The position numbers and the translations under genes were made by a program. A stretch of DNA of 63,782 nt, counting the filler, from Octopus bimaculoides (taxonomy: Eukaryota), in NCBI RefSeq assembly GCF_001194135.2. It is 5 parts of 5 records of this genome, joined end to end, with 100 filler letters (N's around TTAATTAATTAA, not from the genome) between each part and the next. Parts side by side here need not be neighbours in the genome. Positions count along the whole stretch, not along the records: positions 1 to 15,808 come from NC_068985.1; 4 more parts are not named here. One strand, written 5' to 3'. Positions 1 to 15,069 of this stretch are shown piece after piece (within the stretch, counting starts at the first letter, position 1; each line of letters begins with the position of its first letter). The notes under the pieces were generated by a model. That model was not told the origin of the DNA and searched no databases. It saw only the letters and a list, made by a program, of their open reading frames with translations.

Positions 1-246
1 GTATAGTTGCCCACCGCCATGGGTGTGCGTGCATATGGTTCTGCTAATTACAGCTTAATGGTAAAGTTCAAAAGTCTTCGTTTTGGCGCGCCAATTCCAG
101 GAATATATCCGCAGAAACTATTTACTGCGTCGAATATATTCAGAATGAGAACATGAGTAATGGGTAAATATTATTATAAGATCTGGTAATTAGTCATATA
201 TTAATATATTAATTAATATCAATTAATTATCAGGGGGCCGTGTGTG

Positions 247-289
<43 letters not shown>

Positions 290-297
290 GCGTGTGT

Positions 298-1532: not shown

Positions 1533-2689
1533 AGAGATGACTCAGAAGTTGTTGCTCTTCCGCAAACAGCAGTACATTTCTTCAGCTAAATACATGCTGT
1601 TTCTAGCATATTCCAGGTGACATTTGTGCCTCCCCACTTATTTTTATCCTAAATTTCTTCTGATTCCTATGTTTTTGAGAGAGGAAATTAGGATTTCATC
1701 CAACAAACACATTCTCAATATTTTAATTTTCTCCCTCCCCAATTTCATCATTTCTTCATTTTGAAACATTGGGAGGTTTTAGCTTTTTGAAAGCAGTGAG
1801 GTGATGGGTGGGCAAGGTGGGGGAAGGGACATTGAGTGTTTCTTTCAGAAAAATTAAACTTTAGAAAAAAATATATTTCCTAGATTCGTAATCATTTCAA
1901 TCATTTTTGTATTCAATTCTTTATTTCTAGTTGTATTATATGTGCAAAGTATGTTTGCCATCATTTGTAACTGGTAAGAAGACCCTCATTGTAAATATGA
2001 CCTCTTGAAATTGTAGGGAAATTTGGTCTAAATAAGTCTTGGTTAAGATGAAATTCCTTAAATATTCTTTGTGGCACTTGAAGGACTTAGCACCACCAAA
2101 CATCTCAAAATTTAATTTTATGAAGGAGAAAGAAAATGTTTAATAAAGACGTATAATAATTTACATGTAGGAATTCTTTTGAGACATGGAATGCATTTCA
2201 TGGATTATCTAAGAATAAGATCATTGAGAAATATTGCCTTACAGCATCAGATGAAGAATTAAAAAAAAATATCCAGAGACGTGTTTAAAAAATGGAAAAG
2301 TATCCTAGTGCCCTGTTAATATCCTTATTTGAATTGAACTCAGTACCTATTTATTCACCAGTACTTTTTCAATAATTTGGTCACTGATTTACTATGCCTG
2401 TTCTATATCTCTTCTTTTTCTACAATAACAGTCACTGCTTCTTTTAACTTTATTTCCTCTCTACTGCTCCCACATAAACCTACTTATGCCACCTTTTTCT
2501 AAACCTCTCACCACACCTGCTTAGTTTCACCAGAACCTTGTACTAAATACTTCTCCAATCCTTCCTAACTAAAACTTTAACCTTTTTCCATTTAAATTTA
2601 TGCTAATCTAAAACCATTGCCTTCATTAGCCATATTGTACCCCATCAAATAAGCTCAGAAAAGCTTTTGGGCACTTTTCTCTTTTATTC

Positions 2690-3170
2690 ATCAATCAAAG
2701 AATCTTACCTAGGAGGGTTCTTCTTTGAAATCTGTTTTACCTTGGGCTTCTTGGTTGTAAATCCCAGTTTGATGTTCCTGGTGACTTGTCATATTCTTCT
2801 TTCTGTTGTGACGTTTCTTAGTTTCAGGTTTTTCTTGGTAGTCAGTCTTAGATTCCTGTTCTAAGGGATATCATAGTTTGGCCTTCTTGGTAGCCTGTCC
2901 CAGTTTGTTATTCTTCTTGGTGGCATCTTTTAGTTGCATGTTCTTGTGGGTATATATTAATTTGATCTTCTTGGTACTCTGTCTCAGTTTGGTATTCTTC
3001 CTGGTGGTATTTTGTTTTGCATGTTCTTGGGGTTATACCTTAGTTTGACCTACATGGCAGTCTGTCTCACTTTGGTGTTCTTGGTACTATATTTTTGTTG
3101 CATGTTCTTGGGGGTATAACTTAGTTTGACCTTCTTGTTACACTGTCTCAGTTTGATATTTTTCTGGACT
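2690..3170 (-). repeat. Degenerate outlying units of the 81-bp repeat
   Basis: Units such as taccaagaacaccaaagtgagacagac are recognisable on the minus strand, but carry in-frame stops and indels. Confidence 0.85.
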
Positions 3171-3289
3171 ACTGATACACTGCCATCTACTTCAGATCCC
3201 TTTAATGTCGAGTAGATAGGTCACACCTGATTTTAATCGAAATTTTTGGTTAAAAAAAGTGCAAACTATCCATGAATATATATGGTAAT

Positions 3290-3443
3290 CATGCCTTATC
3301 TTGTAGCTTTGAGATTTTAATGTGATTGCTTATTTTAGAATGAAATTGAAGATAGGTGTGAGAGACTGGATTTGGCTGGCTTGAATATAAAATAGGTAGA
3401 ATATCTAGGCCAGATATGGCTGGTTTAAAGGCTAAATGGTTAA
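3290..3443 (+). mobile_element. Partial piggyBac-like MITE (right half)
   Basis: Homologous to 50621-50848 and 51084-51292 (tagctttgagatttt...ggtgtgagagac...ggtttaaaggctaaatggttaa); ends in TTAA. Confidence 0.6.
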
Positions 3444-3959
3444 TTCTGATCCTTGTAGAATCTTATTTATTATCAATATATGTTGATATATGAATGAAAT
3501 CAATAAAGTGCAAAGTGTGATTTATCATTCAATAGCTTGGCAGTAGCTGATATGCACACCAAAAATCAGTGATAATGCGGTGGTGCTGGAGGTGGGGAGG
3601 GTGGCAATATGAGGTGCATTATTTTCAACAATAGCATAGAAGCATTTCAGGATACAAATTTCACCATCCCAACAACCCAGTGGCCCTCTTGTTATTAGTC
3701 AAAATGAAAATTTGTGGTGCACAAAATTGGATATATTGATTTCCATGATTGAGCCAATTCTTCTAATATGCACAAGAGTCTTACCTAGCAGCATTGGAGG
3801 CCCTGGCTGAGTCAGTGTTTTGGTTCTACAGAATTTACTTATTGACAGCAAAGCACAACATAACATACATCAGAATTGGGACCCTAAGCAGTCCTAGTTA
3901 GGACTCTTCATTTGAAGTTCTTGGTGAAAGGTCTTAATCTTCTTTGTTTTAGCAAAGTA

Positions 3960-6900
3960 TCTTAGTTTTAGGTTTTTTTGTTTTTTTTTTGGTAGCAACA
4001 TTTAGAATCTTGTTCTGGATGGTATATCTAAGTGTAGCCTCCTTGGCAGTCCGTCTCACTTTGGTGTTTTCATGGCATATTTTTATTGCATGTTCCTGTA
4101 AGTATATCTTACTTTTACTTTCTTAGAGCTCTGTCTCACTTTGGTGACTTAGTGGCATATTTTTGTTGCCTATCTTGGGGGTATATCTTAGTTTGGCGTT
4201 CATGGTAGTCTGCTTATTTTGATGTTCTTGGTGGCATATTTTTGTTGCATGTGCTTTTGGGTATATTGTACTTTGACCTTCTTGGTACCCTGTCTCGGTT
4301 TGGTATTCTTCTTGGGGGCATATTTTTGTTGTATGTTCTTGGTGTTATATATTAATTTAGTCTTCTTGATAGTCTGTCTCACTTCAGCGTTCTTTGTGGG
4401 ATATTTATGTTGTATGGTCTTAGGAGTATATCTTAATTTGGACTTCTTAGTAATCTGTTTCCCTTTGATGTTCTTGGTAGTATAATTTTGTTGCATGTGC
4501 TTGGTGGTATCTTAATTTGGCCTTCTTTGTAGTCTGCCTCACTTGGGGACATACTTTTGCTGCATATTCATGGGGATATATCTTAATCTGACCCTCTTGG
4601 TGGTCTATATGACTTCGGTGTCCTTATAAGTAAATATTTGTAGCATGTGCTTGGGGGTATATCATAGTTTGACCCTCGTGGTACTCTGTCTCAGTTTGGT
4701 ATTCTTCCTGGTGGGATATTTTAATTGCATGTGCTTGAAGGTATATCTTAATTTGGCCTTTATCGAAGTCTGTCTCAGTTTGGTGTTCTTGGTGGCATAT
4801 TTTTGTTGCATGTCCATGGGCGTATATCTTAACTTGATCTTCTTGGTAGTCTATCCCACTTTGGAGTTCTTGGTAGTATATATTTGTTGGTGTGTTTGGG
4901 GGAATATCGTAGTTTGAACCTCATAGTACTCTGTCGCAGTTCAGTATTCTCTTTGGTTGCATATCTTTGTTCCTCATTCTTGGTGGTATATCTTAGTTTG
5001 GCCTTCTTCATAGTCTGACTGATATTGGTGTTCTTTATGGAATACTTTTGTTGCATGTGCTTCGGGGTATACCTTAATTTGGTCTTCTTGGTAGTCTGTT
5101 TCACTCTGGTATTACCGGTGACATATTTTTGTTGCATGTGATTAGGAGTATATCTTAATTTGGCCTTCTCAGTAGTCTGTCTCCTTTTGGTGTTCTTGGT
5201 GACATATTTTTGTTGCACATGCTTGTGGGTATATCTTAATTTGGCCGTCTTAGAAGTCTGTCTCATTTTTGAGTTCCCAGTGACATATTTTTGCTGCATG
5301 TGCTTGGTTTTATATTGTAGTTTGACACTATTTGTACTATGTCCCAGTTTGGTATTTTCTTCTTGGCATACTTTTGTTCCATGTCTCTGGAAGTATGTGG
5401 AAATTTGGTTTTCTTGAGAGTCTGTCTCACTTTGGTGTTCTTGGGGGCATATTTTTGTTCCACGTGCTGGGGCGTGTGTCTTAATATGGCCTTCTTGGTA
5501 GTCAGTCTCACTTTGGTGTTCTTTGTAGTATACTTTTGTTGCACGTGCTTGGGGATATATCTTATTATGGCCTTCTTGGTAGTCTGTCTCACTTTGATGT
5601 TCTTGATTGTATATTTTTGTTGCATGTGCATGGGGGTATATCTTAATGTGGCCTTCTTCATAGTCTGTCTCACTCTGGTGTTCTTGGTGGAATGTTTTTG
5701 TTGCATGTTCTTGTAGGTATATCTTAATTTGGCCTTCATTGTAGTCTGTCTCACTTTGGGGTTCTTCATCCAATATTTTTGTTGCATGTGCTTCGAAGTG
5801 TACCCTAGTTTGATGTTCTTGAGACTCTGTCTCTGATTGGTGTTCTTGGTGACACCGTTTTGTTGCATGTTCTTGGGTGTACATCTTAATTTGTTCTTCT
5901 TGGTAGTCTTTTTCCCTTTGGGGTTCTTGGTGGCATTTTTTTCTTGCATGTGCATAGGGGCCTCTCTTAATATGGCCTTTTGGATAGTCTGTCTCAGTTT
6001 GGTGCTCTTGGTGGCATATTTTTGTTGCACGTGCTTTGGGGTATATCTTATTATGGCCCACTTGGTAGTCTGTCTCACTTTGATGTTCTTGGTAGTATAT
6101 TTTGGTTGCAGGTGCTGCTGGATATATCTTAATATGTCCTTCTTGGTAGTCTGTCTCACTTTGGTCTTCTTGGTGGCTTACTTTTGTTGTACGTTCTTGG
6201 GGGTATATCTTATAATGGCCTTCTTGGTAGTCTGTCTCACTTTGATGTTCTTGGTAGTATATTTTTGTTGCATGTGCTTGGGGGTATATCTTAATATGGC
6301 CTTCTTGGTAGTCTGTCTCACTTTGGTGTTCTTGGTGGCATATTTTAGTTGCTCGTGCTTGGGGGTATACCTTAATATGGCCTTCTTGGTAGTCAGTCTC
6401 ACTTTGGTATTCTTGGTAGTATATTTTTGTTGCATGTGTATGGGGGTATATCTTAATATGACCTGCTTGGTAGTCTGTCTCACTTTGATGTTCTTGATGG
6501 CTTACTTTTGTTGTACGTTCTTGGGGGTGTCTCTTATTATGGCCTTCTTGGTAGTCTGTCTCACTTTGGTGTTCTTGGTGGTTTACTTTTGTTGTAGGTG
6601 CTTGGGGGTATATCTTAATATGGCCTTCTACATAGTCTGTCTCACTTTGGTGTTCTTTGTGGTATATTTTTGTAGCACATGCTTGGGGGCGTATCTTAAT
6701 ATGGCCTTCTTGGTAGTCAGTCTCACTTTGGTGTTCTCGGTAGTATATTTTCATTGCATTTGCATAGGGGTATATCTTAATATGGCCTTCTTGATAGTCT
6801 GTCTCACTTTGATGTTCTTTGTAGTATACTTTTGTTGCACGTGCGTGGGGGTATATCTTATTATGGCCTGCTTGGTAGTCTGTCTCACTTTGATGTTCTT

Positions 6901-8960
6901 GATAGTATATTTTTGTTGCATGTGCATGGGGGTATATCATGATATGGCCCGCTTTGTAGTCTGTCTCACTCTGGTGTTCTTGGTGGAATGTTTTTGTTGC
7001 ATGTACTTGAGAGTATGACTTAATTTGGCCTTTTGGGTAGTCTGTCTCACTTTGATGTTCTTGGTAGTATATTTTTGTTGCAGGTGCTGCTGGATATATC
7101 TTATTATGGCCTTCTTGATAGTCTGTCTCACTTTGGTGTTCTTGGTGGCTTAATTTTGTTGCATTTGCACGGGGGTATATCTTAATATGGCCCTCTTGGT
7201 AGTCTGTCTCACTTTGATGTTCTTGGTAGTATATTTTTGTTGCATTTGCACGGGGGTATATCTTTATATGGCCCGCTTGGTAATCTGTCTCACTTTGATG
7301 TTCTTGGTAGTATATTTTTGTTGCAGGTGCACGGGGGTATATCGTAATATGACCTTCATGGTAGTCTGCTTCACTTTGATGTTCTTGGTAGAAACTTTTC
7401 GTCGCATGTGCACGGGGGTATATCTTAATATGGCCCTCTTGGTAGTCTGTCTCACTTTGATATTCTTGGTAGTATATTTTTGTTGCATTTGCACGGGGGT
7501 ATATCTTAATATGGTCCTCTTGGTAGTCTGTCTCACTTTGATGTTCTTGGTAGTATATTTTTGTTGCATTTGCACGGGGGTTTATCTTAATTTGGCCTTC
7601 ATTGTAGTCTGTCTCACTTTGGGGTTCTTCATCCAATATTTTTGTTGCATGTGCTTCGGNNNNNNNNNNNNNNNNNNNNNNNNNNNNNNNNNNNNNNNNN
7701 NNNNNNNNNNNNNNNNNNNNNNNNNNNNNNNNNNNNNNNNNNNNNNNNNNNNNNNNNNNNNNNNNNNNNNNNNNNNNNNNNNNNNNNNNNNNNNNNNNNN
7801 NNNNNNNNNNNNNNNNNNNNNNNNNNNNNNNNNNNNNNNNNNNNNNNNNNNNNNNNNNNNNNNNNNNNNNNNNNNNNNNNNNNNNNNNNNNNNNNNNNNN
7901 NNNNNNNNNNNNNNNNNNNNNNNNNNNNNNNNNNNNNNNNNNNNNNNNNNNNNNNNNNNNNNNNNNNNNNGGTCCTCTTGGTAGTCTGTCTCACTTTGAT
8001 GTTCTTGGTAGTATATTTTTGTTGCATTTGCACGGGGGTATATCTTAATATGGCCCTCTTGGTAGTCTGTCTCACTTTGATGTTCTTGGTAGTATATTTT
8101 TGTTGCAGGTGCACGGGGGTATATCTTAATATGGCCCGCTTGGTAGTCTGTCTCACTTTGATGTTCTTGGTAGTATATATTTGTTGCAGGTGCACGGGGG
8201 TATATCTTAATATGGTCCTCTTGGTAGTCTGTCTCACTTTGATGTTCTTGGTAGTATATTTTTGTTGCATTTGCACGGGGGTTTATCTTAATTTGGCCTT
8301 CATTGTAGTCTGTCTCACTTTGGGGTTCTTCATCCAATATTTTTGTTGCATGTGCTTCGGGATGTACCCTAGTTTGATATTCTTGGCACTCTGTCTCTGT
8401 TTGGTGTTCTTGGTGACACTTTATTATTGCATGCTCTTGGGTGTATATCTTAGTTTGGCCTTTTGGGTAGTCTGTCTCTGTTTGTTGTGGTTGGTAGTAT
8501 ATTTTTGTTGCATGTGCTTGTGGGTATATCTTAATCTGGTCTTCTTGGTAGTCTGTCTCACTTTGGGGTTCTTGGGTGCATTTTTTTCTTCCATGTGCTT
8601 GAGAGTATATCTGAATTTGACCTTCTCGGTAATCTGTCTCCCTTTGGTGTTCTTGGTGACACCTTTTTGTTGCACGTTCTGGAGTGTATATCTTAATTTG
8701 GTCTTCTCGGTAGTCTGTCTCACTTTGGTGTTCTTGGTGGCATATTTTTTTTGCATGTGCTTGGCGATATATTGTAGTTTGATCTTCTTGGTGCTCTGTC
8801 TCACTTTGGTATTCTTGGTGACATCTTTTTGTTGCACGTTCTTGAGTGTATGTCTTAATGTGGCCTTTTAGGTAGTCTGCCTCATTTTGATGTTCTTGGT
8901 GAAATATTTTTGCTGCATGTGCTTGTGGATATATCTTAGATTGACCTTCTTGGTAGTCTA
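3960..8960 (-). repeat. 81-bp (27-codon) tandem repeat array
   Basis: Clear 81-nt periodicity, for example gtagtctgtctcactttgatgttcttggtagtatatttttgttgcatttgcacgggggtatatcttaatatggccctcttg. Interrupted by an N gap at 7660-7970. Confidence 0.97.
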
Positions 8961-9324
8961 TCCGAGTTTGGTAGCAGTTTTTAATTTTACATTTTTCTTC
9001 GTAGTCAGTCCCAGATTCTTTTCCTTGGTAACACCTCTTAGTTTGGTCTCGGTACCTTAGCTCATTTACACCTTCAACATATTCTATCTTAGTTTTGTCC
9101 TCTTCAGGGTATTTTATGCCAAATTGGTGTCCTCGTTGGTATTTTACCTCAGTTTTGTTTTGTCCCTGTCTTATATCAATTTGATCTTTTGAGTGTCTTA
9201 TCTCAGTTTGGCCTTTTACATGTGGTCTAATCTTAGTTTGGGCTTCTTTTACCACTTGGTGATCTACCATAGTGTGGCCTTCTTGATGGTCTGTCTTCGT
9301 TGAAGTTTGTAATGGACAACAAGC
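4829..9324 (-). CDS. Large terminal coding exon of an unidentified His/Tyr/Gln/Glu-rich 27-aa repeat protein
   Basis: Acceptor tttttttttaag|GCT at 9324 (phase 0). The HQSETDY frame has no stop over 9324-7971 and 7659-5359, despite many CAA/CAG/TAC codons one substitution from a stop. The ORF shifts frame near 5356 and stops at 4829. Frame across the N gap cannot be verified, and upstream exons were not found. Confidence 0.65.
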
Positions 9325-10300
9325 CTTAAAAAAAAATAATATATCATATGCATACATTTCTCATTATCTAATTTCATCTTCTTCATCATCATAATCATCA
9401 TTATTATTTAGATTGTACAGGCATCTCCCATATTACAGAAGTATTACAATACTGAAAATCTTACTATAATGTAAAATTCCATAATACCACATCGTTGTGG
9501 TTGAAAGGCTAACGTATGAAAGGTGGACAAGAACCAGTGTCTTGACATGCAGGAGCTACATGGCTATCCCACATTATACTGGGCCGGGAGTAATTGAGAA
9601 GGAGACAAAAGAAGGTAATGATGGAGTGCTAGAGAAAATTCTGAAGGTACAAGAAAGGTGAGCATAAAAGAGGAGACAGGCTGTGGGTCATAGGATGGAA
9701 AGTAAGAGAGAGTAAATACTTCATAAGAGTGTGTAGGGAAACTAAGAGATGGTTAGAGACGAAGGTAGAGGTGAATGTAGAACATGATGAACAAGGGTAG
9801 AAATGCAGTTAATAGAAAATGCATGTATAAAGAAAGGTAACAGTGGGGAGTGGGTGTAGAAGAGACTCAGGAAGGATAGATCAGAAGGTAGGGGAATGAT
9901 GTGCACAGAGTAGGAATGATGAGAATATTTAAGTGGGTGCTGAAAAGTTCCTGGCTTTAAGTGCATTGCAAAGAGCCTGGTTGAAGTCCCAACCTTCTGA
10001 GTTTTTTTTACAAGGCTTTTAAAGACTGAAGGACGGCTGCAACAGTGTGTGCGTCTGAGAGGGAAATATATTGCATAAAATTATACTTAACTGATCCTCC
10101 TGTGTTTTCTGTTCCTCAAAGTTAGGAACTTTTCAGCATCCCCTTGTATATCTATCTATCTATCTATCTGTCTGTATGCCTGTTTGTCTGTCTATCCATC
10201 TATCTATTCATCTTTGTATGTATGTATGTTTGCATGCATGTATGTTTGTATGTATGTATACATACGTGTATGTATATACATATATCTGTCTATATATGTG

Positions 10301-12044
10301 TGTAGTAACGCTGTGCGCATGCGTAGTCTCACGCATGCGTGGAATTAAACATCCAAGCTTTCCCGCTTTGATCGATCTCTTTCTTGCTGGCCAGCGATTG
10401 AGCATGGATGTGTCTAGCTGTCTCTCCATCTTTCGAACTCACGCTAGACAGCTCACATCAATATACCAACGTCCCAACAACCATGTTCTCACACACCGAA
10501 GACGTCTCAACAAACAAGATTAAAGCTGTATATTTTCCACCTTGAATAAATGTTGTTTGTGTTGATAGTTTGGAGTTCAGCGTTCCGTTCAATTCCTAAT
10601 TTAATATAGGAAAGTCAGGTGTACATCTAATGATGTATAACCTACTTTCCTANNNNNNNNNNNNNNNNNNNNNNNNNNNNNNNNNNNNNNNNNNNNNNNN
10701 NNNNNNNNNNNNNNNNNNNNNNNNNNNNNNNNNNNNNNNNNNNNNNNNNNNNNNNNNNNNNNNNNNNNNNNNNNNNNNNNNNNNNNNNNNNNNNNNNNNN
10801 NNNNNNNNNNNNNNNNNNNNNNNNNNNNNNNNNNNNNNNNNNNNNNNNNNNNNNNNNNNNNNNNNNNNNNNNNNNNNNNNNNNNNNNNNNNNNNNNNNNN
10901 NNNNNNNNNNNNNNNNNNNNNNNNNNNNNNNNNNNNNNNNNNNNNNNNNNNNNNNNNNNNNNNNNNNNNNNNNNNNNNNNNNNNNNNNNNNNNNNNNNNN
11001 NNNNNNNNNNNNNNNNNNNNNNNNNNNNNNNNNNNNNNNNNNNNNNNNNNNNNNNNNNNNCACGTGTACTGACCTTCTATCTGCTGTAATATCTCACATA
11101 CATATAGACGGCCTGTCTTTTATCATGTTCTTATATGTCGCATTCACACTATCACATACATCTTTTATACCACACTAAATATCTCTTGTTATTCATTTTA
11201 TACGGTTGTGTTTATCATCTTCTATCTTCTATCGTCGACGCTAATGGTCGTACAGAGATTATCTCTGTACGACCATCTGTAAAAGCGTACCTCTTCAAAC
11301 ACCATCATCACCAAGCAGCTTTTTCGCCACCAGCTTCGTTCAACCAAGATTACCACCGCGACGACAACAACTACTACTACCAACTACAAGCATTCCCCCG
11401 ACGCCGCCAACAGTTTCAACTGGACATCATTACCACCGTCAACATCATTACCACCACACATACAGAACAGCTCAATGTACTGTCTACCACAATGTCGTGC
11501 GCCAACAACCCCACCACCAGGGACACACCATATTGCATGTTTTTCTTTCATTCCTTCAATTTGTACATTGCATGCATGTATCACACGAGTGTACATTTCA
11601 TTTCTTTCATTTTCTTTGTGTGTGTTTGTGCTACATCTTGTGGGTGGTTTTCAGTGGCCATCCTGCCTCAGGCGTTCCAACAGAATTATATTATCGTGCG
11701 TTCCGCACTGGCAAGAGAGCCCTGTAGTAACGCTGTGCGCATGCGTAGTCTCACGCATGAGTTGAATTAAACATCCAAGCTTTCCCACTTTGATCGATCT
11801 CTTTCTTGCTGGCCAGCGATTGAGCAAGGACGTGTCTAGCTGTCTCTCCATCTTTCGAACTTACGCTAGACAGCTCACATCAATATACCAACGTCCCAAC
11901 AACCAAGATTAAAGCTGTATATTTTCCACCATAAATAAATATTGTTATGTTGATCAGTTTGGAGTTTCTGCGTTCCGTTCAATACCTAATTTAATATAGG
12001 AAAGTCAGGTGTACATCTAATGATGTATAACCCACTTTCCTAAA
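10301..12044 (+). mobile_element. Gypsy-type LTR retrotransposon remnant with two LTRs
   Basis: Direct repeats at 10301-10652+ and 11723-12044 both start TGTAG; the 3' LTR ends CTAAA (approximately CTACA). TGTG flanks both sides (10297-10300, 12045-12048). A PPT-like cactggcaagagagccc precedes the 3' LTR. The internal peptide IVDANGRTEIISV..KAYL resembles the Gypsy integrase C-terminal NG..E.VS.DRLKPAY motif. Confidence 0.8.
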
Positions 12045-12569
12045 TGTGTATATGCATACATATATATATATATGTCTTTATACAAATACATATATATCGG
12101 TGATGCATTTTTGTTCCTTTTTTATATTTATTATTTGCTATTTCTATATAAACACNNNNNNNNNNNNNNNNNNNNNNNNNNNNNNNNNNNNNNNNNNNNN
12201 NNNNNNNNNNNNNNNNNNNNNNNNNNNNNNNNNNNNNNNNNNNNNNNNNNNNNNNNNNNNNNNNNNNNNNNNNNNNNNNNNNNNNNNNNNNNNNNNNNNN
12301 NNNNNNNNNNNNNNNNNNNNNNNNNNNNNNNNNNNNNNNNNNNNNNNNNNNNNNNNNNNNNNNNNNNNNNNNNNNNNNNNNNNNNNNNNNNNNNNNNNNN
12401 NNNNNNNNNNNNNNNNNNNNNNNNNNNNNNNNNNNNNNNNNNNNNNNNNNNNNNNNNNNNNNNNNNNNNNNNNNNNNNNNNNNNNNNNNNNNNNNNNNNN
12501 NNNATTCGAAAAAAAGTGAAAAATTAAAAGAATTGGCCTCTACATTGCATATATATATATATATATATA

Positions 12570-13362: not shown

Positions 13363-13409
13363 TCTAACATAAAATTGTGATATATATATATATATATATA
13401 TGTATGTAT

Positions 13410-13455
<46 letters not shown>

Positions 13456-13464
13456 ATACATACA

Positions 13465-13674
13465 TAAAGTTAGATGAGGCCGACTTATGGGAATACCTTA
13501 AGTTTCATGTTCATAAAGCGCTTAGCTTTATGGCGTACATCATATTCCATAATTTGTTGGCTTAAAGCCTCTCTAAGCCAATAGGTTTTGGGATCTGATG
13601 ATACGCCATAAAGCGAAGCCCATTATGGGCATGAAACCTAAGGTAATCCCATAAATCGGCCTTATCCAACTTTA
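13465..13674. mobile_element. Fold-back MITE (whole-length palindrome, 210 bp)
   Basis: Arm aaagttagatgaggccgacttatgggaataccttaagtttcatg pairs with catgaaacctaaggtaatcccataaatcggccttatccaacttt, and pairing continues to the centre. TA at both ends. Confidence 0.8.
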
Positions 13675-14895: not shown

Positions 14896-15069
14896 AGCCA
14901 GACACAATTTAATTCATAGTATTTGCCCATTATGCGCCAGTTTGGCTGGGTAACATTGCGAGGAAGCAAGATTCAAGCTGACTTTTAATCTATTNNNNNN
15001 NNNNNNNNNNNNNNNNNNNNNNNNNNNNNNNNNNNNNNNNNNNNNNNNNNNNNNNTATATATATATATA

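What the first reader, a model, noticed from the sequence alone, without database searches (positions are those of the whole stretch)
4829..9324. Unidentified giant His/Tyr/Gln/Glu tandem-repeat protein
About 40 sequenced 27-aa units (HQSETDYQEGHIKIYPQAHATKIYYQE; 3 His and 4 Tyr each) are stop-free over about 3.7 kb behind a clean splice acceptor. The same repeat outside this interval is full of stops, which points to purifying selection. His- and Tyr-rich repeats are typical of metal-binding or oxidatively cross-linked structural, adhesive and coacervating proteins in molluscs. The motif differs from the GHG-type beak proteins, suckerins, reflectins and C2H2 fingers I know. It is a candidate lineage-specific biomaterial or gamete protein; function is inference.
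Basis: partly seen in the sequence, partly recalled or inferred. Interest (0 to 1): 0.85.

Follow-up and report, generated by a model that had tools for sequence, protein, structure and literature searches.

The report
Expanded orphan exon of OGFRL1-like gene
A stray duplicated exon of an octopus opioid-growth-factor-receptor-like gene has amplified its internal 27-amino-acid repeat into an array of more than 6 kb. The first 3.7 kb is still one open reading frame in which stop-creating mutations are strikingly absent, so it may be or recently was translated, but nothing shows it is a biomaterial or gamete protein.

Summary
On the minus strand, 40 complete 81-nt (27-aa) units sit behind an AG acceptor at 9326-9325: 12 before the gap and 28 after it. 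Their consensus is HQSETDYQEGHIKIYPQAHATKIY[H/Y]QE, with no stop or net frameshift over 3,657 sequenced bases. The 311-N gap is not in frame as written; register needs 15+81n bases.

The locus is not an unidentified gene. It is a roughly 3.7-kb partial duplicate (one exon plus flanking intron) of exon 2 of Octopus bimaculoides "opioid growth factor receptor-like protein 1" (XP_052823768.1), which lies 43 kb away. The copy has no exon 1 and no OGFr_N exons. The ancestral 3' end of the exon is wrecked.

The 81-mer occurs only at this locus, so it is not a dispersed satellite. Amino-acid changes look unconstrained: 27 synonymous variants against 24.6 expected. Stops are nonetheless absent from this frame alone (0 observed, 24±10 simulated), even among the youngest variants (P≈0.01).

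No database protein contains the repeat, and AlphaFold predicts disorder (pLDDT 31).

Best reading: an expanded orphan exon that is, or recently was, translated. The biomaterial or gamete idea is unsupported.

The parts
9325..9340 (-). T-rich tract plus AG splice acceptor (AG = 9326-9325); the exon starts at 9324
   Evidence: Sequence. The T-tract plus AG is conserved in all three paralogous copies. It is homologous to the exon-2 start of XP_052823768.1 (...HIYE|VFWPSK) and of the O. sinensis ortholog.
8974..9324 (-). Non-array 5' part of the exon (117 codons of degenerate 9-aa sub-repeats), homologous to the parental OGFRL1-like exon 2
   Evidence: 63% aa identity to paralogue P1 and 49% to P3. 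Most indels between copies are multiples of 3 (27, 42, 27, 3, 39 nt; the one 11-column gap is in the P3 row). dN/dS is 0.51-0.87.
7971..8973 (-). 12 complete 81-nt units plus 10 codons, open in the His/Tyr/Gln/Glu phase, upstream of the gap
   Evidence: identity to consensus 0.863; 0 stops in 330 codons.
7660..7970 (.). Assembly gap of 311 N. The frame is not continuous as written; the true length must be 15+81n bases for register.
5357..7659 (-). 11 codons plus 28 complete 81-nt units, open in the same repeat phase
   Evidence: identity to consensus 0.887; 0 stops in 753 codons; no net frameshift.
4829..5356 (-). End of the ORF. A frameshift inside the array puts translation into a second repeat phase (basic K/Q/T-rich tail, pI about 11). 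Stop codon at 4831-4829.
4021..4828 (-). Decayed continuation of the array, with stops and frameshifts in the His/Tyr phase
   Evidence: Over 4021-5356 the identity to consensus is 0.824, with 20 stops in 436 projected codons and 9 indels that are not multiples of 3.
3161..4020 (.). Non-array insertion splitting the decayed array; contains a high-copy SINE-like element at about 3286-3445
   Evidence: TRF gap between arrays. More than 5,000 first-look candidates genome-wide for query positions 126-285.
2914..3160 (-). Three further decayed 81-nt units
2706..2913 (-). Relic of the ancestral 3' end of the exon. TAG at 2710-2708 replaces the last codon (AAG), and the conserved GTAAG donor (GT = 2707-2706) follows. 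Upstream there are 1-nt and 25-nt indels and further stops.
   Evidence: Alignment with P1; translation.
1600..2705 (-). Copy of the intron downstream of the parental exon. Homology with P1 ends near 1600.
   Evidence: Window 1895-2460 is 96% identical to the P3 locus.
9341..10164 (-). Copy of the intron upstream of the parental exon (83% identical to P1, 89% to P3). 9925-10164 is a high-copy SINE.

Best explanation
The interval is an orphaned, partial duplicate of exon 2 of an Octopus bimaculoides opioid-growth-factor-receptor-like (OGFRL1-like) gene. Exon 2 is the N-terminal low-complexity exon built from 9-aa/27-nt sub-repeats.

Shown: a roughly 3.7-kb segment, consisting of the exon plus about 1 kb of upstream intron and about 1.8 kb of downstream intron, was copied into the space between two tandem OGFRL1-like genes. 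Inside the copied exon, a trimer of the 27-nt sub-repeat (81 nt, 27 aa) was amplified into an array of more than 6 kb. The copy carries no exon 1 or promoter and no OGFr_N-domain exons.

Shown: the 3' third of the array and the ancestral exon end have decayed, with stops, frameshifts and a SINE insertion. The 5' two-thirds, from the conserved acceptor for at least 1,219 sequenced codons plus a 175-codon shifted tail, has stayed free of stops and net frameshifts. Meanwhile its amino-acid sequence drifted almost freely.

Inferred: this pattern means the frame is, or was until recently, translated, and nonsense and frameshift mutations were removed by selection. The product would be a long, intrinsically disordered, near-neutral polypeptide (pI about 6) rich in Gln, Glu, Tyr and His, in which length, composition and frame integrity matter rather than exact sequence.

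Unknown: how the exon is transcribed. Possibilities are splicing through its acceptor from a neighbouring OGFRL1-like transcript or an unassembled upstream exon, or initiation at the in-frame ATG at 9357-9355.
For: Identity of the locus:
- The 5' part of the ORF matches a 248-aa ORF 43 kb away (63% aa identity, E=4e-19) and a third copy 42 kb the other way.
- That 248-aa ORF is exon 2 of XP_052823768.1/XP_052823769.1, "opioid growth factor receptor-like protein 1" of O. bimaculoides, on the same 127,476,059-bp contig. The protein carries OGFr_N (PF04664, E=2e-46).
- An O. sinensis ortholog has the same architecture.
- Flanks are colinear with the parent from window 1600 to 10164 only.
- The acceptor is conserved.
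- The parent exon has the same 27-nt periodicity.

ORF selection:
- 0 stops against 23.9±9.5 simulated with shared ancestry kept (minimum 2 in 2,000 runs), and 24.9±10.3 with re-placement restricted to each 27-nt block.
- The control frames behave neutrally: 14 and 5 stops.
- Of 15 possible stop-creating single changes, only 3 occur. Each sits in a codon with a second change that avoids the stop.
- The youngest variants (77 singletons and doubletons) give 0 stops against 4.9 expected (P=0.01), yet they added 10 and 4 stops to the control frames.
- The old 5' units are as diverged (0.843 identity to consensus) as the decayed 3' part (0.824). They have 0 stops in 210 codons, against 20 in 436 codons and 9 frameshifting indels in the 3' part.

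Disorder: AlphaFold2 gives mean pLDDT 31 and no secondary structure.
Against: - No promoter or exon-1 copy exists. Exon 1 is single-copy, at C5:78547929-78548367.
- No OGFr_N exons were found anywhere in the roughly 26 kb of assembled sequence downstream.
- No protein containing this repeat exists among 1.84 billion cluster representatives, or in the 5.8-billion-protein search. So neither the O. bimaculoides nor the O. sinensis annotation calls it a gene.
- There is no synonymous excess among units. dN/dS among paralogues is 0.5-0.9 and not significantly below 1.
- The ancestral exon end is destroyed.
- The frame across the assembly gap is unverified.
- No expression data could be consulted.
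- The parent gene itself evolves at dN/dS of about 0.9 between species, even in its OGFr_N domain. The whole family may therefore be under very weak constraint.
Confidence: 0.55

Rival explanations
1. It is a dead pseudo-exon. The duplicated exon fragment was never, or has long not been, expressed. Its internal repeat expanded as a locus-specific non-coding minisatellite by slippage and unequal exchange. The long open frame is a by-product of a T-poor strand and of descent from stop-free coding units.
For: - It is an orphan copy without exon 1, promoter or OGFr_N exons.
- The ancestral 3' end is broken and a SINE has inserted into the array.
- There is no gene model anywhere.
- Amino-acid change looks neutral.
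- Two other frames of the consensus unit are also stop-free, and one plus-strand frame runs 393-426 codons.
- The surroundings are transposon-rich.
Against: - The stop depletion is specific to one frame. It survives models that keep shared ancestry and regional coldness.
- It is also seen in the youngest variants (P=0.01), which cannot have been inherited from the parental exon.
- There are no net frameshifts in 40 units plus 117 codons, against 9 in the equally diverged 3' part.
Confidence: 0.33
2. It is an alternative exon of a neighbouring OGFRL1-like gene rather than a gene of its own. One possibility is a 3'-terminal exon reached from the upstream paralogue, whose last OGFr_N exon lies about 20 kb upstream. 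That would give an OGFr_N domain followed by C-terminal repeats. Another is an upstream alternative exon of the downstream gene.
For: - It has the same orientation as both neighbours and lies between them.
- Its acceptor is intact, conserved and phase 0, and exon junctions in the parent are phase 0.
- Selection on the frame needs some transcript context.
- From my own knowledge, vertebrate OGFR carries C-terminal imperfect repeats after OGFr_N.
Against: - No annotated isoform contains the repeat.
- The distances are 20-30 kb, through gaps and transposons.
- The idea is purely positional, with no transcript evidence.
Confidence: 0.12
3. One reading: a lineage-specific secreted structural, adhesive, metal-binding or gamete protein made of His/Tyr-rich repeats.
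For: Only composition (Y 10.5%, H 9.2%, Q 12.5%, E 11.7%), the long ORF, and predicted disorder compatible with coacervation.
Against: - It derives from the N-terminal exon of an OGFRL1-like gene. From my own knowledge, characterised vertebrate members of that family are intracellular.
- No signal peptide or first exon was found.
- There is no similarity to any beak, sucker, reflectin or other protein in Pfam or among 1.84 billion representatives.
- Sequence-level constraint on His and Tyr positions is weak.
Confidence: 0.04

Closest known systems
Octopus bimaculoides opioid growth factor receptor-like protein 1 (XP_052823768.1 / XP_052823769.1) and its O. sinensis ortholog, exon 2
   Same: - The 5' 117 codons and the first units are homologous (63% aa identity to the paralogous exon; HMMER E=3.8e-26).
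- They share the same acceptor, the same flanking intron sequence (82-83% identical), the same 9-aa/27-nt sub-repeat and the same E/Q/T/K/H/Y-rich composition.
- Both evolve nearly neutrally at the amino-acid level while staying in frame.
   Different: - The parental exon has only about 3 units (248 aa) and splices on to five OGFr_N exons.
- The window copy has at least 40 open units plus about 20 decayed ones.
- It has no exon 1 and no OGFr_N exons, and its ancestral donor end is broken.
Vertebrate OGFR with its imperfect C-terminal repeats (Pfam OGFr_III); comparison from my own knowledge, not tested here
   Same: Both belong to a gene family that combines an OGFr_N domain with a low-complexity tandem-repeat region of variable copy number.
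   Different: - The octopus repeats lie N-terminal to the domain.
- Pfam detected no similarity between them and OGFr_III.
- The window copy lacks the domain altogether.
Coding minisatellites (VNTR exons) such as those of mucins or involucrin; comparison from my own knowledge
   Same: - The unit length is a multiple of three.
- Expansion occurred inside an exon.
- The frame is preserved while residues drift.
- The product is disordered.
   Different: In this locus the expanded exon is detached from the rest of its gene, part of the array has already decayed, and expression is unproven.
Cephalopod His-rich beak proteins, suckerins and reflectins
   Same: Only a His/Tyr-rich repetitive composition and predicted disorder.
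   Different: - No sequence relationship was detected. Pfam gave no hit above cut-off, and HMMER against 1.84 billion representatives hit only the OGFRL1-like cluster and three spurious repeat proteins.
- No secretory leader was found.
- The genomic origin is different.

Membership tests
OGFR / OGFRL1 protein family | Presence of the OGFr_N conserved domain (PF04664) | tested here: not met
   Pfam finds no OGFr_N in the window ORF. No OGFr_N exons lie between the array and the next gene's exon 1. The paralogue P0001 scores E=2e-46.
OGFR / OGFRL1 protein family | Homology to the N-terminal repeat exon of the octopus OGFRL1-like genes | tested here: met
   63% and 49% aa identity; E=3.8e-26; O. 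sinensis, E=9.7e-24; colinear flanks and a shared acceptor.
Satellite DNA (dispersed or multi-locus non-coding tandem repeat) | The same unit present in many arrays or loci of the genome | tested here: not met
   DNA and protein searches of the whole 2.34-Gb genome find the unit only in this window, with a weak match in the paralogous exon. The tool scores only the best candidates, so these counts are lower bounds.
Satellite DNA (dispersed or multi-locus non-coding tandem repeat) | No frame-specific constraint | tested here: not met
   Stops are depleted in one frame only.
Coding minisatellite / VNTR exon | Unit length a multiple of 3, and array open in one frame between splice or start and stop signals | tested here: met
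   81-nt units; 3,657 sequenced bases open behind a conserved acceptor. Frame continuity across the gap is unknown.
Coding minisatellite / VNTR exon | Transcribed and translated | not testable with these tools
   No transcript, ribosome-profiling or proteome data are reachable. No gene model exists in the protein collections.
Protein-coding sequence under purifying selection on residues | Excess of synonymous over non-synonymous change | tested here: not met
   Variability by codon position is 0.102/0.138/0.132. There are 27 synonymous variants against 24.6 expected (P=0.25). Only the HQSETDYQE block shows a weak, non-significant trend. Paralogue dN/dS is 0.51-0.87.
Unprocessed pseudogene / gene fragment | Partial copy lacking the promoter and other exons, with disabling mutations | tested here: inconclusive
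   It is a partial copy with a disabled 3' end. The 5' 3.7 kb carries no disablement, and stops there are selectively absent.
Cephalopod His-rich beak proteins / suckerins / reflectins | Sequence similarity to family members; secretory leader | tested here: not met
   No Pfam or HMMER hit to any such protein. No first exon or leader was found.

The most novel reading that the evidence does not exclude
A new protein-coding gene is being born, or has been born, from an orphaned exon. A single duplicated exon of an OGFRL1-like gene is detached from its catalytic or binding domain. It has amplified a 27-aa unit to at least 40-45 copies and is kept open by selection. It would encode a stand-alone disordered Gln/Glu/Tyr/His-rich polypeptide of at least 1,400 residues, specific to the Octopus lineage, possibly acting as a multivalent, phase-separating or metal-binding scaffold.
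Probability: 0.25. Interest if true: 0.6.

Novelty: new variant of a known kind. Interest (0 to 1): 0.35.

Why it matters
If the frame is really translated, this would be a datable example of gene birth by exon orphaning plus repeat expansion. A low-complexity exon would have escaped its parent gene and grown about 15-fold, while being policed only for stops and frameshifts. It would also add a very large Tyr/His/Gln-rich disordered protein to the cephalopod repertoire.

If it is not translated, the locus is a useful caution. A 1,400-codon open frame with a good acceptor can sit in a dead gene fragment. The frame-specific absence of stops would then need another explanation.

In both cases the finding no longer stands as an "unidentified" protein, because its origin is now known.

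Tried and rejected
- Dispersed satellite: rejected. Whole-genome DNA and protein searches find the unit only at this locus.
- Higher-order 243-nt repeat suggested by TRF: rejected. Unit identity is flat (0.81-0.83) at all lags from 1 to 15.
- Plus-strand hydrophobic ORFs (LVVCLTL..., 393-426 codons): rejected. They carry 5 stops against about 11±6 simulated in the core, which fits neutrality. They are a by-product of the unit.
- Stop-free state inherited from parental coding units: weakened. The youngest variants also avoid stops.
- Regional mutational coldness as the cause: rejected. Within-block re-placement gives the same result.
- Hunt for downstream OGFr_N exons and an upstream exon 1 near the window: none found. 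The flanking 2.2-kb and 8.6-kb N runs could hide one small exon each.
- Homologue searches with the array found nothing. With the 5' part plus array they found only the OGFRL1-like proteins. The other three HMMER hits are unrelated repeat proteins, one of them rich in IQ-type repeats.
- Pfam: only sub-threshold noise (DUF6470, 26.4 bits against a cut-off of 28.9).
- Structure prediction gave no fold (pLDDT 31), so no fold search was run.
- Positive control for purifying selection, using OGFr_N exons of O. bimaculoides against O. sinensis: it unexpectedly gave dN/dS 0.90. It therefore cannot serve as a contrast.
- Possible compensated +1/-1 indel in the "DYPKG" units: equally explained by three substitutions, so not used.
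- Literature searches found nothing on this locus.

Full report
**1. What is in the sequence**

The window is G000:C5:78571506-78587369 of a 2.34-Gb genome. A protein look-up later identified the organism as Octopus bimaculoides.

Tandem Repeats Finder reports an 81-nt array at 4074-7656 and 7976-8959. It has a 27-nt sub-period, and three further copies lie at 2914-3160.

On the minus strand one phase reads HQSETDYQEGHIKIYPQAHATKIY(H/Y)QE. This 27-aa unit is itself three 9-aa sub-repeats. I counted:
- 12 in-register units at 8973-8002, plus 10 codons up to the gap;
- 11 codons and then 28 in-register units at 7624-5357 after the gap.

That makes 40 complete units with no stop and no net indel. 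The phase is open from the exon start at 9324 to 7971 and from 7659 to 5357, which is 3,657 sequenced bases.

At about 5357 a frameshift inside the array moves the ORF into a second repeat phase (TPKHMQQKY..., basic). It runs 175 more codons to the stop at 4831-4829. The array itself continues to about 2914, but there it is full of stops and frameshifts.

**2. The gap**

7660-7970 is 311 N, which is not a multiple of 3. The open phase differs on the two sides.

From the partial codons at both edges, the true gap must be 15+81n bases (258 or 339) for frame and register to hold. Both edges belong to the same array on the same strand. The unit four before the gap and the first full unit after it are identical. 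Continuity is plausible but not shown.

**3. Is the open frame more than chance?**

Three frames of the consensus unit lack stops: the His/Tyr phase, the K/Q phase, and one plus-strand hydrophobic phase. So openness alone proves little.

I therefore asked whether the 128 distinct variants (402 occurrences) among the 40 units avoid stops in a frame-specific way.
- I re-placed each variant at a random site with the same consensus base, keeping the set of units that carry it so that shared ancestry is preserved. This gives 23.9±9.5 stops in the His/Tyr phase (minimum 2 in 2,000 runs) against 0 observed.
- The K/Q phase has 14 observed against 28±11 simulated. The plus-strand phase has 5 against 11±6.
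- Restricting re-placement to the same 27-nt block gives the same answer: 24.9±10.3, minimum 4 in 3,000 runs.
- Of the 15 single changes that would create a stop, only three occur. Each is in a codon with a second change that avoids the stop.
- The 77 youngest variants (singletons and doubletons) produce 0 stops against 4.9 expected (P=0.01). They added 10 and 4 stops to the two control frames.
- The eight oldest 5' units are as diverged from the consensus (0.843 identity) as the decayed 3' part (0.824). They have 0 stops in 210 codons. The 3' part has 20 stops in 436 projected codons and 9 indels that are not multiples of three.

I conclude that stops and frameshifts have been selectively removed from this one frame during the array's own history.

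**4. No constraint on residues**

- Variability by codon position is 0.102/0.138/0.132.
- Synonymous variants number 27 against 24.6 expected (P=0.25).
- Only the HQSETDYQE block shows a weak, non-significant excess of synonymous variants: 64% of possible synonymous variants are seen against 39% of non-synonymous ones.

**5. What the locus is**

The unit is not a dispersed satellite. Genome-wide DNA and protein searches find it only at this locus, with a weak match 43 kb away.

The 5' "unique" part of the ORF has two paralogues on the same strand of C5:
- P1 at 78537232-78537618 (63% identity, in a 248-aa ORF);
- P3 at 78622732-78622956 (49% identity).

An exhaustive HMMER search of 1.84 billion representatives with the 5' 451 residues returned one real hit (E=3.8e-26). 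That protein starts with the P1 ORF and continues into an OGFr_N domain (PF04664, E=2e-46). Its cluster holds XP_052823768.1 and XP_052823769.1, [quoted passage not shown], on a contig of exactly C5's length.

In that model, exon 1 (MLSITVNLYYLFVHIYE) joins the repeat exon at an acceptor homologous to window 9324. The repeat exon ends ...EELSK|GTAAG and is followed by five OGFr_N exons. O. sinensis has an ortholog with the same architecture. There is no 81-nt array within its 60-kb locus. The parental exon has the same 27-nt periodicity.

**6. The window copy is only a fragment**

- Homology with P1 is colinear from window 1600 to 10164 and stops there. That corresponds to about 3.7 kb of the parent: the exon plus flanking intron.
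- Exon 1 and its surroundings are single-copy, at C5:78547929-78548367, upstream of P1.
- OGFr_N exons exist downstream of P1 and P3. None exists in the assembled sequence between the array and P1's exon 1, even with a permissive tblastn. About 3.4 kb of N runs in that span (0.7, 0.5 and 2.2 kb) could hide small exons, and an 8.6-kb N run lies upstream of the window.
- The homologue of the parental exon's 3' end lies at window 2706-2913. Its last codon is TAG in front of the still-conserved GTAAG. Upstream are 1-nt and 25-nt indels and further stops.
- A high-copy SINE-like element sits inside the decayed array.

**7. Evolutionary context**

- Flanks of the window copy are 82-83% identical to P1 and 89% to P3.
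- Orthologous introns of P1 and O. sinensis are 89% identical. So the duplication probably predates that species split.
- Units differ pairwise by about 20% with no higher-order periodicity, so the array is old.
- dN/dS of the 5' part among paralogues is 0.51-0.87.
- The parental repeat exon has dN/dS 0.89 between the two species, with only in-frame indels.
- The OGFr_N exons also give 0.90. The whole gene is fast-evolving, and residue-level neutrality is a family trait rather than a mark of death.

**8. The putative product**

- Composition is Q 12.5%, E 11.7%, Y 10.5%, H 9.2%, T 8.7%, I 7.9% and K 7.8%.
- The pI is about 6, with a basic shifted tail.
- AlphaFold2 on six units, using the other units as the alignment, gives pLDDT 31 and no secondary structure.
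- Pfam finds nothing above threshold.

**9. Verdict**

This is not an unidentified biomaterial gene. It is an expanded orphan copy of the N-terminal repeat exon of an OGFRL1-like gene.

The frame-specific absence of stops and frameshifts argues that the frame is or recently was translated (confidence 0.55). The missing first exon, the missing domain exons, the missing gene model and the neutral residue evolution keep a dead pseudo-exon a serious rival (0.33).

Transcript data, a gap-free assembly and the orthologous locus in sister species would settle the question.

Noticed in passing
G000:C5 about 78517000-78623000 (loci L053, L059, window): There is a tandem cluster of OGFRL1-like sequence on one strand, with repeat-exon copies spaced about 43 kb apart. 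P1 is a complete annotated gene. P3 has a truncated 107-aa repeat exon and four detectable OGFr_N exons; the exon matching residues 75-129 of the query was not found. The window copy lies between them.
   Followed up: partly
L067-L072 and L053 versus L060 (O. sinensis): The annotated OGFRL1-like gene evolves at dN/dS of about 0.9 between O. bimaculoides and O. sinensis, even across its OGFr_N domain (dS 0.146, dN 0.132). This is unusually relaxed or diversifying for a conserved Pfam domain.
   Followed up: partly
window 1895-2460: This stretch is 96% identical to the P3 locus (L059 2905-3465), while neighbouring paralogous segments are only 74-89% identical. That suggests a recent gene conversion between copies, or a young shared insertion.
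   Followed up: no
window 9925-10164 (and an inverted partial copy near 10114-10151); window about 3286-3445: Two different high-copy SINE-like interspersed repeats are present, with 3,665 and 5,002 first-look candidates genome-wide at 80-86% identity.
   Followed up: partly
window 9355-9363: An in-frame ATG (9357-9355) lies 11 codons upstream of the acceptor, directly after a TGA (9363-9361). An unspliced transcript could therefore in principle start translation of the whole ORF without an upstream exon.
   Followed up: no
window 7971-8330 and 7300-7659: The units flanking the assembly gap repeat each other. Unit 8 equals unit 12 at 100%, and unit 9 matches unit 13 at 96%. This is either a local segmental duplication within the array or partial redundancy of the two contig ends.
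   Followed up: partly
L055 (C5:78561506-78571505) and L053 9121-9933: Retrotransposon debris fills the space where OGFr_N exons would be expected. It includes integrase-like and reverse-transcriptase-like ORFs and a LINE-type RT fragment.
   Followed up: no
window 240-297, 882-953, 10213-10259, 13380-13466; gaps at 10653-11060, 12156-12503, 14995-15055: There are ordinary microsatellites ((GT)n, (CA)n, (TGTA)n, (AT)n) and three further assembly gaps. Runs of N of 2.2 kb and 8.6 kb abut the window on either side.
   Followed up: no
units 6, 19 and 32 of the array (for example window about 5000-5100 for unit 32): The recurrent variant DYPKG (TAT CCA AAA GGC against TAC CAA GAA GGC) can be read as a +1/-1 compensated frameshift five bases apart, or as three substitutions.
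   Followed up: partly
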